Below, piece by piece: positions 26,641 through 31,169 of a stretch of 64,000 bases of DNA. Positions within the stretch are counted from its first letter, which is position 1. Each line of letters starts with the position of its first letter. The translations under genes and the position numbers were made by a program. The notes below the pieces were generated by a model. The model saw only the letters and a program-made list of their open reading frames with translations, was not told the DNA's origin and made no database searches. The stretch spans positions 464,167-528,166 of the forward strand of contig NW_005434664.1 in the NCBI RefSeq assembly GCF_000315625.1, given 5' to 3'. The stretch comes from Guillardia theta CCMP2712 (taxonomy: Eukaryota; Protista; Cryptophyta).

Positions 26641-27671
26641 TCAAATTCCAAACCCGCCTGTCACCTCCAACGTGTGCCCTGTGATGTAGCTCGCCCAAGG
26701 AGAGACGAGCATCATCACGCCTCCAGCAGCCTCCTCGTCCGTTCCGATCCTTGCAAGAGGGACGGCCTGCCGCAGCTTCTCGGGGTCCTGGCACAGACAA
26801 GTCAACAACAACAAGATGATGCCGACGATGCTCTTCACCATCAGGAGCTTCAAGACGTGAGGAGGAATCCCTTGCGTGACCGTCTGATTCAGCCCCTCGA
26901 CCACCTCTCCCTGCTCCGTAGACCTTGTGAGCCGAGTACTGATCCACCCGTAGGCGACGGCGTTGCATCGGACGCCGAAAGGACCCCATTCCTTGGCTAC
27001 GGTCTTTGTCAATCCAATCACCCCCATCTTTGCTGCTGCATAGTTGGCTTGTCCTACGTTTCCATGCAAGCCTGACGTGCTCGAGATGTTGACGATGCTC
27101 CTGTCCTTGGGCGCCTCTCCCGCTTGCAGCTCCTTCTTCCCCAGGTCCCGCATGTATGGAGCCGCAGCTCGTATCATACGGAAAGGGGAACTGACGTGGA
27201 CGTTGATGATTACATCCCACTGCTCGTCTGTCATGTTCTGAATCATCCCATCCCAGGTGAAGCCTGCAAACTGATCAGCAATGCCATGGCATCCACTATT
27301 CCTGGACGCGCGCACCAGCATTGTTCACAAGAATGTCAACAGAGCCGAACTCCGAATTGGCTTTGCTGAGAATCTTCATGGGAAACTCAGGCTCCATCAC
27401 GTTGCCTGCGACTGAGATGGCTGTTCCACCTTGGTTCCTGATGCTACTCGCAACGTCCTCCGCTACCTCGGGGCGTATGTCGTTGACGACAACTCTGGCT
27501 GAGACAAGACGGCAGCGTCATGCACGTGTCTGCCCTGCGTCTCCTCACCTCACCTCTCTGTGCTGCTAGTAGACGCGCTGTCGCTGCTCCGATCCCTCGC
27601 CCGCTGCCGGTAACCACTGCCACTTTACCGCTCAGCATCGCGCTGAGATCGCCAAAGTACTGGTCAGCCAT
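26641..27671 (-). CDS. Short-chain dehydrogenase/reductase (3-oxoacyl-ACP reductase-like)
   Basis: TGSGRGIG, NNAG (split by an intron), NISS, YAAAK, NAVAYGWI and ITGHTLEVTGG. Confidence 0.93.
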
Positions 27672-27888
27672 CTAGCGCGGATTGGAGCACCTCCATGGTA
27701 ATGCGTAGTAAGCAAGAGACTGGTGGGGAGGGGGAGGGGAGGGAGGGAGAAAAGAAGCAAGTATGTGCATGCGAGGAGTCGAGAGAGCGCATCAGAAGTG
27801 TCAAGCCATGGTGACTGAAGCGCAGGAGACTGAATCGGGAGGCGACGAGCATGGAGGAACGAACTTCGAGAATTGAGCCGCCGGTTTC

Positions 27889-29460
27889 ATGCGGCGATTG
27901 AGGAGGCTCACGAAGGCCAGGAGACCTGCTTGCATGTGGCCGCCGTCTTCCTCTGATGTCTTCCAGTCCCTTGTGTTCGTGGCGGTAGCGGTGAACTTAC
28001 TCATCATCGTCCACTTCGCACCATCGATTTTCTCCGAGGCTCTCAGCAACACAGTCGACCTCGTGTCCTCCTACAAGACCGCCTACGATCTCCACGTCCC
28101 CTCCATCCGAATTTCTAACACCCTCAGCGAAGTGGGAGCGCGCAACCTCAGCGAAGCGTTCGAGAAGTTTCCATGGGAGCAGCAGCCGACCAGGCTGTTG
28201 AGCTGGATCAACCTGACCTTCAGACCCAACAAGACAGGTCCAACATGGGTGCAGATGACGAGCTTCGGGCCGCAGGGGATTGCCCTCCTGCATCACATCC
28301 AGAAGCTCGACCTGATCCGCCATACTCGCATCGTCACCGTTGACACTCTCCACCTGTTCCCGGAGACCTACGACCTCATCGCCAAGGCCAAGGATTTCTT
28401 CAAGCTCGGGGACAACCTCAAGGTGTACAAGTCCTTGGAGGGCTCCCGTGAGAATTTCGAGAAGGCCTATGGCAGCAAGCTGTGGAAGGTCGACCTGCAG
28501 TTGTTCGAGTTCTTGACCAAGATCGAACCGACCCGACGCGCCCTCAACGAGCTCGGCGTGTTGGCATGGGTGACGGGAAGGCGGAGGTCTCAGGGAGGCG
28601 AGCGGTCGCATCTCCCCCTGGTTGAAGTCGATCAGAACGACAACCGAGTGAAAGTGAACCCCTTTGTTGTGTGGGAGAGAGAGGATGTATGGAAGTACAT
28701 CAAGAAGCACAACTTGCCGTACAATGCCCTGCATGACCGAGGGTACACATCAATCGGGGACACCATCTCCACTGACAAGAGCAGCGAGTTCGACAGCGAG
28801 CGTGCTGGGAGGTGGAAGAGCGTGGCGGGGAAGTCTGAGTGCGGGATCCATCTGCCGATGAACTACCAATCCCTACAAGATTTCGTGACTCGCTCGAAGC
28901 AGCTCAGGCACGGATACTTGTGGGACTATGATGCGAGAGCAGAGGCCACAAAGCTGGGAATCAAGATTGTATGGAGAGGCGAAGTGCGTGCGAGATGCTG
29001 AGAGTCAACAGGTGACGGAAGAAACCTTCGAGCAGGATGTGGTCACGAGCAAGGAGAACATCCTGATCGACATCTATGCTCCATGGTGTCCTCATTGTCG
29101 CCTGATGGATCCTGAGTTTCGAAAACTCGCGAGCTTGGTGATGAGTCGCGATCTTCGCAAAGAGACTGATCTCTTGCTTTGAGCAGGTTGCAAGTGATTC
29201 CAACCATACTTTTCGCAATTCCTTGAAGCTGGCAAGGATGGATGGATGGCAGAATCACGTGCCAGCAGCATACAGCGACAAGTTCAACGTTGAAGCATTC
29301 CCTTCCCTCTATTTGGTGATGAAGAAGTCGAGGTGAACCACCTTCGCCCTGCATGCCCTGCTTGACAAGATCCTACAGCCTGCGGGTCTCGAGATACGGA
29401 AGTTTCCACCACTCCTCCTTTATCCTCAATTGGGTCCGACAAGAACTAGCTAAACGATGA
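27889..29460 (+). CDS. PAPS/APS reductase (CysH-like, no FeS motif) with an N-terminal TM segment and a C-terminal thioredoxin domain
   Basis: TSFG, DTLHLFPETY, KIEP, GRRRSQGGER, KVNP, YNALHDRGYTSIGD, ERAGRW, KSECGIH. A phase-0 intron at about 28969-29011 joins the frame to IDIYAPWCPHC...FNVEAFPSLY...QELAKR*. Confidence 0.88.
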
Positions 29461-29471
29461 ATTTCAAACTC

Positions 29472-30800
29472 TCACAGTCTCTCTGGCCTTTTCCAGCTGA
29501 ACGATGGAAAGCTGGTATCGTTGCCATCCTCCCATGCTTCATCCCGATAGAAAGTCAGTGGTATCTCGTTGTTGAACGTCGCTCGACAATGACGTTCTAA
29601 CTCGTTCACCACTTCGCGCCTGGCAGTGAGTTCCACGGGTGACCGCACAGGGATGCCGTTTCTGCGTACTTGGCGATTTGGTGTGGGCTGGCTGCTCACA
29701 TTCTCTGACCAACTCATGAGGCTGGGCACCTCCTACATCAATCGCTGCCGGCTGAATTCTGATCAAAGAGGAGTTACTATTCCGTGAGTGAACGCCCTTT
29801 TCTTGATTTCTGCTTTCACCCTCTTGATGAGAGGGCGGAGTCGGTTTCCATTCCAGTGCCTTCCTGGTTGGGCAGGCAATCCGACCTGCTTCGTCTGATT
29901 CTCCATTCTCAATTAGCGCTTGATTCTCGTTGTGGCCATGCCAAACATGATGAAAATATGTTTGAATGTCTTCTTTGACCTTTGACAAAATGAGTACTGG
30001 CATGGTAGAGCTATTGCAATCAGGGAACCACCTCGTGTACGAGTAACTTGGCTGGATCCAGCAGCGTTGTGAGCCCCTGTGGATCCAAAGTCAGTAAAGT
30101 GCACTTGTATCGTGTTGTAGCCACAAGGAGGGAGGAATGCCCCCAACTTCACTCACTTCCGCTGCGAACCTTTCTTCTGTGGGGAGACGATCCATGAAGT
30201 TATTGATCGGGCGAGGAACAATGGCCCTCGCGATGTTGTTCGGATCCATCAGTTGCTGTGGCAGCGGTAAGATCTCAGTAGAGCATGATCTTAGTTTGAA
30301 CCTCGAACTTGTGGACTGCCGTCACTTGCTCATCATTCTTCACCACCGCCATCGAACCCAGCCAAACACTAGAGTGGACGTTCGTATCTACACAACCAAT
30401 CAGCCATGTGAGCTGCAGCAGAGGTGGAGGGCAGCGAGTGCAAACCTTGCGTCCTGGGAAAATTTGTTCTGCAGACAGGGCATGAAGGCTGCCTGTCAAA
30501 CCACGCCTGCGTCGATTGTCTCAAATGAAGGAACACCACACGGTCATTTGAAGGAAACGCACATCGATGCAATCCTCGTGAAAAGAGTGAGTGCACGGGA
30601 GGAACTTCCATCTCCTTTGAGACGGCTTGCATCTCCGTCAGTCGCTGTGCAAGGTGGACTCTTAAGATAGAAGACCTGGTGGCATATTGCGCACGAGACA
30701 TGATCGCTTGTATTGGCATGCCTAGAGGAAGCTACATCATCCTCCATGCACCATGCTGGGATATCAGGATCCTGCGATGACCACGATAAGCGAACATAGA
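29472..30800 (-). CDS. RING-H2 zinc finger protein (putative E3 ligase), multi-exon
   Basis: Spliced CAIC...PCTHSFHEDCID|AWFDRQPSCPVCR. Both ends are approximate. Confidence 0.7.
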
Positions 30801-31169
30801 GCTGAAAATCATTGAAACCTGCGGCTTTAAGATTGAACTAGCAAGATTCACACTGGGCTCGAAGTTCGCGCCTGACGAACCAGGAGATCGGTTAATCACC
30901 AAGATTGCTCTCACTTCTCCTCCTCCCCTTCCTTCCTCCCTCAATCCCTCTGCACTTCTTTCCTTCTCCTTGTCTTCTCTCCTTACATGTCTTCTCGGCG
31001 ATCTTCTCTTGCTTGGGCTTCTGCCGCCTCAACGATGCTACCAACTTTTTCATGGTTTCATGCCGGTCGGGATAGGAAGGGCCATTTCAAATGACTGATT
31101 TTATCTTCAAATTAAATAGTAAATTTTCATTAAGCTCCTAGTCGATCTCCTACCCAGGGGTCATCATCT

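What the first reader, a model, noticed from the sequence alone, without database searches (positions are those of the whole stretch)
27889..29460. FeS-less PAPS/APS reductase with an N-terminal membrane anchor and its own fused WCPHC thioredoxin
Seen: all core CysH motifs including the catalytic ECGIH, but no CC/CxxC iron-sulfur ligands (FEFLTKIEP and TSIGDTIS where FeS-type APS reductases have CC..K and SIGCxPC). An in-frame spliced PDI-like thioredoxin domain follows (APWCPHC..FPSLY), and a long hydrophobic helix (LVFVAVAVNLLIIVHFA) sits after a basic N-terminus. Known: plant APRs have FeS plus a fused Trx domain, while PAPRs and APR-B lack FeS and typically use free thioredoxin. Inference: this is a hybrid, self-reducing, possibly endomembrane- or plastid-envelope-anchored sulfonucleotide reductase. 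The ORF track splits the fusion in two.
Basis: partly seen in the sequence, partly recalled or inferred. Interest (0 to 1): 0.75.

Follow-up and report, generated by a model that had tools for sequence, protein, structure and literature searches.

The report
Algal FeS-less sulfate reductase–thioredoxin fusion
This is a real, correctly spliced gene of the cryptophyte alga Guillardia theta for a sulfate-assimilation enzyme (an iron-sulfur-free APS/PAPS reductase fused to a thioredoxin domain), but this domain combination has been described in microalgae since 2008, so it is an ordinary member of a known family.

Summary
Window 27889-29460 (+) is a four-exon gene with three GT..AG introns of 43, 49 and 46 nt. 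Five intron-less transcript contigs match the exons exactly. The 477-aa product is already in UniProt as a Guillardia theta protein.

It has:
- a basic N-terminus followed by a 26-residue uncharged helix;
- a PAPS_reduct domain with the catalytic ECGIH, and no other cysteine in that domain, so no [4Fe-4S] site;
- a C-terminal PDI-type thioredoxin domain with WCPHC.

The "new hybrid" reading does not hold. "APR-B fused to thioredoxin" in eukaryotic microalgae is described in Patron et al. 2008, Bromke 2013 and a 2024 J Exp Bot review. The two substitutions seen here, FxxxxK and GDxxxT, are the signature those authors give. All 31 thioredoxin-fused homologues examined share it. They form one clade apart from fungal and cyanobacterial PAPS reductases.

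The basic-plus-hydrophobic N-terminus is also family-wide. It is most simply the signal-peptide half of a bipartite plastid-targeting signal, but an uncleaved signal anchor is not excluded. G. theta has a second paralogue whose presequence looks more transit-peptide-like.

Verdict: a new member of a known kind, of low interest. The practical gain is a corrected gene model, since NCBI annotates only a 205-aa fragment.

The parts
27843..27888 (+). 5' UTR as far as the transcript contigs reach. It contains a 16-codon upstream ORF (27851-27901) that overlaps the first ATG.
   Evidence: Transcript contigs L001-L005 start at window 27843. The uORF was read directly from the sequence.
27889..28968 (+). 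Exon 1 (aa 1-360): basic N-terminus, hydrophobic helix, linker, reductase domain, catalytic tail and most of the long linker helix. An alternative start is Met16, at 27934.
   Evidence: P0123 starts at 27889 and P0001 (the JGI call) at 27934.
27958..28035 (+). Uncharged hydrophobic span, aa 24-49 (VFQSLVFVAVAVNLLIIVHFAPSIFS). It is the h-region of a signal peptide or a signal anchor, with F44-A-P at its end.
   Evidence: KD 19-mer mean 2.32 and N-flank charge +7/-1. AlphaFold2 models a helix at aa 21-43 with pLDDT about 78-87.
28249..28776 (+). PAPS_reduct (PF01507) domain, aa 121-296.
   Evidence: Pfam E=3e-43. NCBIfam TIGR00434 cysH scores 212 bits against a cutoff of 165. Foldseek matches yeast PAPR 2oq2 at TM 0.86 and moss APR-B 4bwv at 0.83.
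28504..28521 (+). FEFLTK (aa 206-211). It takes the place of the CCxxRK FeS-ligand pair of FeS-type APRs.
   Evidence: The signature Y/FxxxxK is as defined in PMC2275785.
28750..28773 (+). SIGDTIST (aa 288-295). It takes the place of the SxGCxPCT FeS-ligand pair.
   Evidence: The signature GDxxxT/S is as defined in PMC2275785.
28837..28851 (+). Catalytic ECGIH (aa 317-321). Cys318 is the residue that carries the S-sulfo intermediate.
   Evidence: E317, C318, G319 and H321 are invariant in 31 fused homologues. The mechanism is as summarised in PMC11350084.
28969..29011 (+). Intron 1: 43 nt, GT..AG, phase 0, exactly at the start of the thioredoxin domain. If retained, the frame stops at 28999-29001 and gives a 370-aa product without thioredoxin.
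   Evidence: The retained-intron product exists as database protein P0122 (UniRef/MMETSP).
29012..29137 (+). Exon 2 (aa 361-402): first half of the thioredoxin domain. WCPHC has its cysteines at 29087-29089 and 29096-29098.
   Evidence: Pfam Thioredoxin E=2.3e-12 on this exon alone. P384, C386 and C389 are invariant in the family.
29138..29186 (+). Intron 2: 49 nt, GT..AG.
29187..29332 (+). Exon 3 (aa 403-451, last codon split): LARMDGWQNHVP and the cis-Pro loop region FPSLYLV.
   Evidence: The ERp57 a' domain aligns here (IAKMDATANDVP ... FPTIYF).
29333..29378 (+). Intron 3: 46 nt, GT..AG, phase 2.
29379..29460 (+). Exon 4 (aa 451-477 plus the stop codon at 29458-29460): last strand and C-terminal helix of the thioredoxin fold.
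   Evidence: AlphaFold2 models strand 453-457 and helix 463-475.

Best explanation
This is a nuclear gene of Guillardia theta for an APR-B-type (iron-sulfur-free, PAPR-derived) assimilatory sulfonucleotide reductase with a C-terminal PDI-type thioredoxin domain. It belongs to the algal 'APR-B fused to thioredoxin' family that is already described.

Shown here:
- the gene model and its splicing;
- the two domains;
- the catalytic ECGIH;
- the absence of any FeS-ligand cysteines;
- membership of one clade of thioredoxin-fused algal enzymes;
- a second paralogue in the same genome.

Inferred mechanism, from the established chemistry of the family: Cys318 on the flexible C-terminal tail attacks the sulfate of APS (possibly also PAPS) and forms an enzyme S-sulfocysteine. 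The fused domain's Cys386 thiolate then releases sulfite and forms a disulfide. That disulfide resolves to a C386-C389 disulfide, which is re-reduced by glutathione or a plastid reductant.

Inferred targeting: the N-terminal basic region plus hydrophobic segment takes the protein co-translationally into the ER / chloroplast-ER. The most likely reading is that it is the signal-peptide half of a bipartite plastid-targeting signal, so the enzyme works in the plastid. That is where G. theta's single ATP sulfurylase is predicted to make APS.
For: Identity and gene model:
- Transcript contigs match the exons at 100%, with three GT..AG introns.
- The spliced product equals P0001 and P0123. P0123 is UniRef A0A6U5WAN2, 'Thioredoxin domain-containing protein, Guillardia theta'.

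Domains:
- PF01507 at 5.5e-43 and PF00085 at 2e-15.
- The cysH subfamily TIGR00434 is passed.
- The AlphaFold2 model has pLDDT 87.8 and pTM 0.79. Foldseek matches the reductase part to PAPR and APR-B (TM 0.83-0.92) and the C-terminal part to PDI a-type domains.

No FeS site:
- FEFLTK and SIGDTIST sit at the two ligand positions.
- C318 is the only cysteine in the reductase domain (read directly).

Known family:
- PMC2275785, PMC11350084 and PMC3901274.
- All 31 thioredoxin-fused homologues carry the same signature.
- They fall in one branch with SH-aLRT 95, separate from 75 cyanobacterial and fungal PAPRs.

Targeting:
- Patron et al. report signal plus transit peptides on sulfate-assimilation enzymes of secondary algae.
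- The bipartite-signal rule, with an aromatic residue at +1 of the transit peptide, is given in PMC3101018. F44-A-P lies at the end of the hydrophobic segment here (F-I-S-P and F-A-S-P in paralogue 2 and in Hanusia).
- The G. theta ATPS is listed as plastidial (PMC4220642).
Against: - Substrate is not settled. By sequence the reductase domain is nearer to fungal PAPS reductases (7rge 169 bits, 2oq2 152 bits) than to moss APR-B (4bwv 126 bits). Its best NCBIfam model is the PAPS_reductase equivalog, though below cutoff.
- The N-terminus is not a textbook cleavable signal peptide. If Met1 is used, the n-region is 23 residues at +7/-1. The uncharged span is 26 residues, which is transmembrane length. 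No small residues sit at -1/-3 before F44.
- The 30 residues after the helix hold 3 acidic residues, against 0 in paralogue 2. That is poor for a transit peptide.
- Those residues are 29/30 identical to the ortholog-like P0002, although the two proteins are only 81% identical overall.
- No targeting predictor or localisation data were available.
- The electron donor of the CPHC domain is unknown.
Confidence: 0.85

Rival explanations
1. The hydrophobic segment is an uncleaved type II signal anchor. The enzyme would then stay tethered to a membrane of the chloroplast-ER, periplastidal or envelope system, with the reductase and thioredoxin domains on the non-cytosolic side. G. theta's two paralogues would serve different compartments.
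For: - The uncharged span is 26 residues and follows a +7/-1 flank.
- A basic-then-hydrophobic N-terminus is found in 22 of 24 full-length fused relatives. One of them is labelled Pyramimonas, a green alga with a primary plastid that would not use an ER signal for plastid import.
- The post-helix stretch is acidic and is more conserved than the protein average (29/30 against 81% overall with P0002).
- The thioredoxin domain is closest to ER-lumenal PDI a/a' domains (75 bits) and far from the Arabidopsis APR1 C-domain (28 bits).
Against: - Many of the long n-regions come from longest-ORF calls on transcripts. They shrink if an internal Met is the true start; here that is Met16, which the JGI caller chose, and a uORF overlaps Met1.
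- An aromatic F lies at the end of the helix in both paralogues and in Hanusia, as in bipartite plastid signals.
- A reductive enzyme in an oxidising ER-type lumen makes little metabolic sense.
- The Pyramimonas row sits on a long branch (1.29) and could be a contaminant or a gene transfer.
- No predictor or experiment was available.
Confidence: 0.2
2. It is functionally a PAPS reductase, not an APS reductase, with a tethered thioredoxin. It would reduce PAPS made by APS kinase.
For: - The best sequence and structure matches are fungal PAPS reductases.
- The best NCBIfam model is TIGR02057 PAPS_reductase, at 213.6 bits.
- The P-loop reads TSFGPQG, close to the TAFGLTG of fungal PAPRs (alignments).
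Against: - Moss APR-B is equally PAPR-like yet reduces APS.
- Extracts of algae that have only this enzyme type show very high APS reductase activity.
- A dinoflagellate homologue is fused to ATP sulfurylase, which points to APS (PMC2275785; PMC3901274).
- The TIGR02057 score is below its cutoff of 254.2.
Confidence: 0.25
3. The fusion is an assembly or annotation artefact. The reductase (ending at the stop at 28999-29001) and the thioredoxin would then be separate products.
For: - A 370-aa intron-retaining product (P0122) exists in MMETSP/UniRef.
- The NCBI genome model is a 205-aa fragment without thioredoxin (P0121).
Against: - Five transcript contigs are spliced in frame at all three introns.
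- The exon-2 frame has no start codon near the thioredoxin domain apart from Met residues inside the reductase's linker region.
- The same fusion is found in at least 31 homologues from cryptophytes, diatoms, dinoflagellates and others.
- AlphaFold2 models one continuous helix (aa 329-355) leading into the thioredoxin fold, with pTM 0.79.
Confidence: 0.03

Closest known systems
Algal APR-B-like reductases fused to thioredoxin (for example the two Thalassiosira pseudonana APRs; Patron et al. 2008, Bromke 2013, J Exp Bot 2024 review Fig. 5)
   Same: - The order of parts: N-terminal presequence, FeS-less PAPS_reduct domain with Y/FxxxxK and GDxxxT/S, ECGxH, then a C-terminal CxxC thioredoxin domain.
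- The same clade in my tree.
- 32-50% whole-length identity to named diatom, dinoflagellate and cryptophyte members.
   Different: - This is the cryptophyte (G. theta) member, which those papers did not sample; 'Guillardia' occurs 0 times in PMC2275785.
- Its CxxC is CPHC, where diatoms and dinoflagellates mostly have CGHC.
- It lacks the extra linker CxxC that the diatom/dinoflagellate subgroup has.
- It is one of two diverged paralogues, about 55% identical.
Physcomitrium (Physcomitrella) patens APR-B (PDB 4bwv)
   Same: - FeS-less, PAPR-like fold. Foldseek TM 0.83 and phmmer E=2e-35.
- The same signature at the former FeS positions.
   Different: - Moss APR-B has no thioredoxin domain and uses free thioredoxin (PMC11350084).
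- It has a longer insert before ECGIH (alignment).
- The window protein scores higher against fungal PAPRs than against it.
Fungal and cyanobacterial PAPS reductases (Met16/CysH; PDB 2oq2, 7rge)
   Same: - The closest solved structures and sequences for the reductase domain: 169 and 152 bits, TM 0.86-0.92, and 40-46% identity to many PAPRs.
- No FeS cluster.
   Different: - They are stand-alone proteins of about 240-320 aa, with no N-terminal hydrophobic segment and no fused thioredoxin.
- They form separate clades.
- The window protein is below the TIGR02057 equivalog cutoff.
Plant-type APS reductase (Arabidopsis APR1-3; TIGR00424)
   Same: The overall idea is the same: a plastid presequence, a reductase domain and a fused C-terminal redox domain that makes the enzyme independent of free thioredoxin.
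   Different: - Plant APR binds a [4Fe-4S] cluster through CC...CxxC, which is absent here.
- TIGR00424 scores 67.7 bits against a cutoff of 553.
- The redox domains are only distantly alike: 5yry scores 28 bits, against 75 bits for PDI A3/A4. The two fusions may therefore be independent.

Membership tests
Sulfonucleotide reductase (CysH/PAPS_reduct) family | PAPS_reduct fold (PF01507 / TIGR00434). | tested here: met
   PF01507 scores 148 bits against a cutoff of 22.5. TIGR00434 scores 212.4 against 165.1. Foldseek TM to PAPR, APR-B and APR structures is 0.79-0.92.
Sulfonucleotide reductase (CysH/PAPS_reduct) family | Catalytic Cys in the C-terminal K/R-E-C-G-L/I-H motif. | tested here: met
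   KSECGIH at aa 315-321. E, C, G and H are invariant in 31 homologues.
APR-B-type (FeS-less APS reductase), including the algal thioredoxin-fused form | Y/FxxxxK and GDxxxT/S in place of CCxxRK and GCxPCT (Patron et al. 2008). | tested here: met
   FEFLTK and (SI)GDTIST. C318 is the only cysteine in the reductase domain.
APR-B-type (FeS-less APS reductase), including the algal thioredoxin-fused form | Groups phylogenetically with algal FeS-less isoforms and moss APR-B rather than with bona fide PAPRs. | tested here: inconclusive
   It groups with all 31 thioredoxin-fused algal proteins, apart from fungal and cyanobacterial PAPRs (SH-aLRT 95). Moss APR-B and plant APR could not be put in the tree, because no sequence of them was available by reference. 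By phmmer, moss APR-B (126 bits) ranks below fungal PAPRs.
APR-B-type (FeS-less APS reductase), including the algal thioredoxin-fused form | Uses APS as substrate. | not testable with these tools
   This needs an enzyme assay. The literature infers APS use for the algal clade from extract activities (PMC2275785).
APR-B-type (FeS-less APS reductase), including the algal thioredoxin-fused form | C-terminal thioredoxin moiety with CxxC (algal sub-type). | tested here: met
   PF00085 scores 57 bits against a cutoff of 23.5. WCPHC is present. The in-frame fusion is confirmed by transcripts.
Plant-type FeS APS reductase (TIGR00424) | Two Cys pairs that ligate a [4Fe-4S] cluster. | tested here: not met
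   Both pairs are replaced. TIGR00424 scores 67.7 bits against a cutoff of 553.2.
Thioredoxin-dependent PAPS reductase equivalog (TIGR02057) | Score above the curated equivalog cutoff. | tested here: not met
   213.6 bits against a cutoff of 254.2.
PDI-type (a/a') thioredoxin domain | Thioredoxin fold with a WCxHC active site and a cis-Pro loop. | tested here: met
   The best PDB sequence hits are PDI A4 and PDI A3 a/a' domains (E about 1e-20). The alignment includes the APWC-HC and FP(S/T)(L/I)Y motifs. Foldseek TM to single PDI a-domains is 0.76-0.83.
Bipartite plastid-targeting signal of cryptophytes (signal peptide plus transit peptide) | N-terminal hydrophobic signal sequence. | tested here: met
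   KD 19-mer mean 2.32 at aa 29-47.
Bipartite plastid-targeting signal of cryptophytes (signal peptide plus transit peptide) | Aromatic residue or Leu at +1 of the transit peptide after signal-peptide cleavage. | tested here: inconclusive
   F44 lies at the end of the helix (VH-FAPS), but no cleavage-site predictor was available and the -1/-3 residues are not small. The rule is from PMC3101018.
Bipartite plastid-targeting signal of cryptophytes (signal peptide plus transit peptide) | Ser/Thr-rich, acid-poor transit-peptide-like stretch. | tested here: inconclusive
   The next 30 residues hold 8 S/T but 3 acidic and 2 basic residues. Paralogue 2 has 10 S/T and 0 acidic residues.

The most novel reading that the evidence does not exclude
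The basic-plus-hydrophobic N-terminus, conserved in nearly all algal APR-B-thioredoxin enzymes (and present in one labelled as from a green alga with a primary plastid), could be an uncleaved signal anchor rather than a cleaved signal peptide. The family would then be membrane-tethered. In G. theta the two paralogues would have split roles: paralogue 2 in the stroma, with a clean transit peptide, and this one tethered in another compartment of the complex plastid or endomembrane system.
Probability: 0.2. Interest if true: 0.45.

Novelty: new member of a known kind. Interest (0 to 1): 0.15.

Why it matters
There is little conceptual gain. The FeS-less reductase plus thioredoxin fusion is an established variant of assimilatory sulfate reduction in microalgae.

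The practical value is threefold:
- A corrected four-exon model for a G. theta gene that the genome annotation gives only as a 205-aa fragment. The paralogue GUITHDRAFT_72734 is likewise truncated, to 280 aa.
- The observation that cryptophytes keep two diverged paralogues with different-looking presequences.
- A reminder that no purified member of this fused class appears to have been characterised for substrate (APS or PAPS) or for electron donor. If it expresses well, this well-modelled protein (pLDDT 88) would be a reasonable candidate for such work.

Tried and rejected
- Rfam scan of the whole window: no hits.
- Literature search for a reported transmembrane anchor on algal APS reductases: nothing relevant. 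Dorrell 2017 and the T. pseudonana metabolic-model preprint add nothing on architecture.
- The APR-B crystal-structure paper (PMID 24100135) is not held. One paper reading failed on a term with an apostrophe and I did not repeat it. Residue-level APS/PAPS determinants therefore could not be checked against a source.
- Plant APR and moss APR-B could not be put in the tree. No tool gave me their sequences under a reference, and I did not type them in.
- The family scans, the first search and the literature had already settled the identity.
Exons were searched separately by reference. All whole-protein steps used the stored database proteins P0001 and P0123, which are identical to the spliced product.
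- Separate reductase and thioredoxin genes: rejected (see rival explanations).
- The window is Guillardia theta nuclear DNA, not human. No restricted material was involved.
This is the same report with that field added and one garbled coordinate in the observation check corrected.
Full report
**What is there.**
- ORF 27889..29001 (370 aa) begins MRRLRRLTKARRPAC-MWPP... and is followed by the hydrophobic LVFVAVAVNLLIIVHFA.
- It matches Pfam PAPS_reduct at E=3e-43 over aa 121-296 and ends with the catalytic ECGIH.
- NCBIfam places it in the cysH subfamily: TIGR00434 scores 212 bits against a cutoff of 165.
- It falls below the PAPS_reductase equivalog cutoff: TIGR02057 scores 213.6 against 254.2.
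- It is far below the plant FeS-APR model: TIGR00424 scores 67.7 against 553.
- A second frame downstream encodes APWCPHC. That 42-aa exon alone matches Pfam Thioredoxin at 2.3e-12.

**Gene model and organism.**
The word-index protein search with exon 1 returned a 462-aa protein (P0001) that is 100% identical and carries PF01507 plus PF00085.
- P0001 is encoded without interruption on five transcript contigs of JGI sample 3300017164 (L001-L005).
- Exact-block mapping of these contigs onto the window gives 100% identity from 27843 onward.
- The three gaps resolve to canonical GT..AG introns: 28969-29011 (43 nt), 29138-29186 (49 nt) and 29333-29378 (46 nt).
- The exons are therefore 27889-28968, 29012-29137, 29187-29332 and 29379-29460. 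That is 1434 nt, or 477 codons plus a stop.

The cluster look-up names the organism.
- The 477-aa member P0123 is UniRef A0A6U5WAN2, 'Thioredoxin domain-containing protein, Guillardia theta'.
- The NCBI genome model P0121 is a 205-aa internal fragment on a 1.14-Mb scaffold.
- P0122 (370 aa) is exactly the unspliced ORF, that is, an intron-1-retaining transcript.

Exons were searched by reference, and all whole-protein analyses used the stored proteins P0001 and P0123. The window is cryptophyte nuclear DNA, not human.

**No iron-sulfur site.**
Patron et al. 2008 define the two ligand positions. FeS-type APRs have CCxxRR/K and GCxPCT. FeS-less isoforms have Y/FxxxxK and GDxxxT/S.
- The window protein has FEFLTK and (SI)GDTIST.
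- C318 is the only cysteine in its reductase domain. The others are C15 and the C386/C389 pair of the CPHC.

**Structure.**
An AlphaFold2 model built on a 31-sequence alignment is confident: mean pLDDT 87.8 and pTM 0.79. It shows:
- a helix at aa 21-43;
- a low-confidence linker, with aa 57-68 below pLDDT 50;
- the reductase domain from about aa 81;
- a less confident tail around ECGIH;
- a long helix at aa 329-355;
- a thioredoxin fold at aa 359-475.

Foldseek matches the reductase part to yeast PAPR 2oq2 (TM 0.86), Candida auris PAPR 7rge (0.92), moss APR-B 4bwv (0.83) and FeS-APRs 2goy and 7lhr (0.81-0.85). It matches the C-terminal part to PDI a-type domains.

By sequence, the reductase domain scores 169 bits to 7rge, 152 to 2oq2, 126 to moss APR-B and 77 to Pseudomonas FeS-APR. 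The thioredoxin domain scores about 75 bits to PDI A3 and A4, counting both catalytic domains of each chain; the ERp57 a' domain alone gives 52 bits. It scores only 28 bits to the Arabidopsis APR1 C-terminal domain 5yry.

**Is the architecture unusual? No.**
- Of the 120 best relatives, about a third carry PF01507 plus PF00085. They come from cryptophytes (Hanusia), diatoms (Amphora, Cylindrotheca, Epithemia), dinoflagellates (Durusdinium, Symbiodinium) and others.
- All 31 thioredoxin-fused sequences I inspected have Y/FxxxxK and SxGDxxxT/S and lack the FeS cysteines.
- In a maximum-likelihood tree of the reductase domain (114 rows, 216 columns, quick search), all 31 sit on one side of a branch with SH-aLRT 95. 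Eight shorter or fragmentary rows sit with them. The 75 cyanobacterial and fungal PAPRs are on the other side.

The literature states this outright.
- Patron et al. 2008 report FeS-less, plastid-targeted isoforms in chromist, chlorarachniophyte and dinoflagellate algae. The legend of their Figure 4 tree defines a symbol for a C-terminal thioredoxin moiety.
- Bromke 2013 says both T. pseudonana APRs have a C-terminal CxxC thioredoxin domain, lack the FeS cysteines, and that extracts reduce APS at very high rates.

Guillardia itself is not mentioned in Patron et al.. I found no paper describing the G. theta enzymes.

**Paralogues.**
G. theta has a second copy: P0125, 462 aa. Its NCBI model GUITHDRAFT_72734 (P0124) is truncated at 280 aa. 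P0124 appears to read into an intron at the same linker/thioredoxin junction; this is inferred by comparing P0124 with P0125.
- P0125 is 61% identical over the reductase columns, and Hanusia phi P0003 is its ortholog.
- The window protein is sister to that pair, with support 93.
- P0002 (81% identical) looks like the window gene's ortholog in a related strain or species.

**The N-terminus.**
- The window protein has a 23-residue flank of charge +7/-1, then a 26-residue uncharged span, then 30 residues with 3 acidic, 2 basic and 8 Ser/Thr.
- Paralogue 2 has a similar helix followed by an acid-free, Ser-rich stretch. That is a much better transit peptide.
- Of 24 full-length fused relatives, 22 have a charged N-flank, net positive throughout. 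All 24 have a 19-41-residue uncharged span (KD 19-mer means mostly 1.8-2.9). None of the stand-alone fungal or cyanobacterial PAPRs has one.

Points in favour of a bipartite plastid signal:
- Patron et al. report signal plus transit peptides for these pathways in secondary algae.
- An aromatic residue at the start of the transit peptide marks stromal proteins in cryptophytes and diatoms (PMC3101018).
- F44-A-P, F-I-S-P and F-A-S-P sit at the end of the helix in the three cryptophyte sequences.
- G. theta's only ATPS is listed as plastidial.

Points in favour of an uncleaved anchor:
- the length of the span;
- the strongly basic flank;
- the lack of small -1/-3 residues;
- the acidic and unusually conserved post-helix stretch (29/30 identical to P0002, against 81% overall);
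- the same feature in a sequence labelled Pyramimonas, which has a primary plastid.

A caveat applies to the anchor case. Start codons in transcript-derived ORFs are uncertain. Here a 16-codon uORF (27851-27901) overlaps ATG 27889, and the JGI caller chose Met16.

I could not run a signal-peptide or transmembrane predictor. I rate the bipartite-signal reading as more likely (about 0.6) and the anchor reading at about 0.2.

**Mechanism.**
The two-step chemistry is the established one for the family, as summarised. The sulfate group is transferred to the conserved Cys, giving an S-sulfocysteine. Sulfite is then released reductively by thioredoxin, glutaredoxin or a fused C-terminal domain.
- Shown here: both catalytic elements are present, invariant across the family and joined in one polypeptide.
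- Not shown: self-reduction, the identity of the external reductant, and APS or PAPS preference.
- The sequence leans PAPR-like. But moss APR-B shows that PAPR-like, FeS-less enzymes can be APS-specific, and the algal clade is inferred to use APS.

**Verdict.**
This is a new, previously mis-annotated cryptophyte member of a known kind. Interest is low (0.15). The residual open question is whether the family-wide N-terminal segment is a signal peptide or a signal anchor.

Noticed in passing
window 29539-31000 (- strand); L001-L005 beyond position 1480: A convergent minus-strand gene with a RING-finger domain (zf-RING_2, 7e-11) overlaps the 3' end of the reductase transcript. The non-stranded transcript contigs fuse the two genes. 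Its introns read CT..AC on the + strand (29980-30031, 30256-30301, 30507-30562, 30626-30675 and others). The five contigs differ by retention of 30077-30156, 30388-30445 and 30626-30675, so there is alternative splicing or intron retention. The gap at 30777-30823 has no canonical boundaries.
   Followed up: partly
window 26641-27671 (- strand): A divergent short-chain dehydrogenase/reductase gene lies upstream. ORF 26641-27321 matches adh_short_C2 at 8e-33. ORF 27444-27671 begins MADQYF...GKVAVVTGSGRGIGAATA, the Rossmann TGxxxGIG motif, and is probably its first exon. Only about 170 bp separate that ORF's start codon (27671) from the 5' end of the reductase transcript contigs (27843), which suggests a shared bidirectional promoter. 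The gap includes a purine-rich GGGGAGGGGGAGGGGAGGGAGGGAGAAAAGAAG tract at about 27726-27758.
   Followed up: partly
window 27851-27901 (+): A 16-codon upstream ORF in the 5' UTR overlaps the first in-frame ATG (27889) of the reductase gene. It may shift initiation to Met16 (27934), which would remove the strongly basic n-region.
   Followed up: no
window 28969-29011; database protein P0122: An intron-1-retaining transcript product (370 aa, ending ...IKIVWRGEVRARC) is in UniRef/MMETSP. It would give a reductase without its thioredoxin domain. It may be unspliced pre-mRNA or a real isoform.
   Followed up: partly
G. theta paralogue P0125 / P0124 (GUITHDRAFT_72734), not in the window: There is a second APR-B-thioredoxin paralogue (about 55% identical) with a more transit-peptide-like presequence. 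Its NCBI model also stops at the linker/thioredoxin junction, which suggests a conserved phase-0 intron at the domain boundary in both paralogues.
   Followed up: partly
homologues P0013, P0017-P0020, P0022-P0029, P0058, P0071, P0108: The diatom/dinoflagellate subgroup of the family carries an extra conserved CxxC (for example LPCSSC, LPCDTC) in the linker about 30 residues before the thioredoxin CxxC. It is absent from the cryptophyte subgroup, which instead has a conserved GYxWD...A...G(I/V) linker helix.
   Followed up: no
whole window: All confirmed introns in this part of the window are very short (43-80 nt). There are no Rfam hits at gathering score anywhere in the 64 kb.
   Followed up: yes
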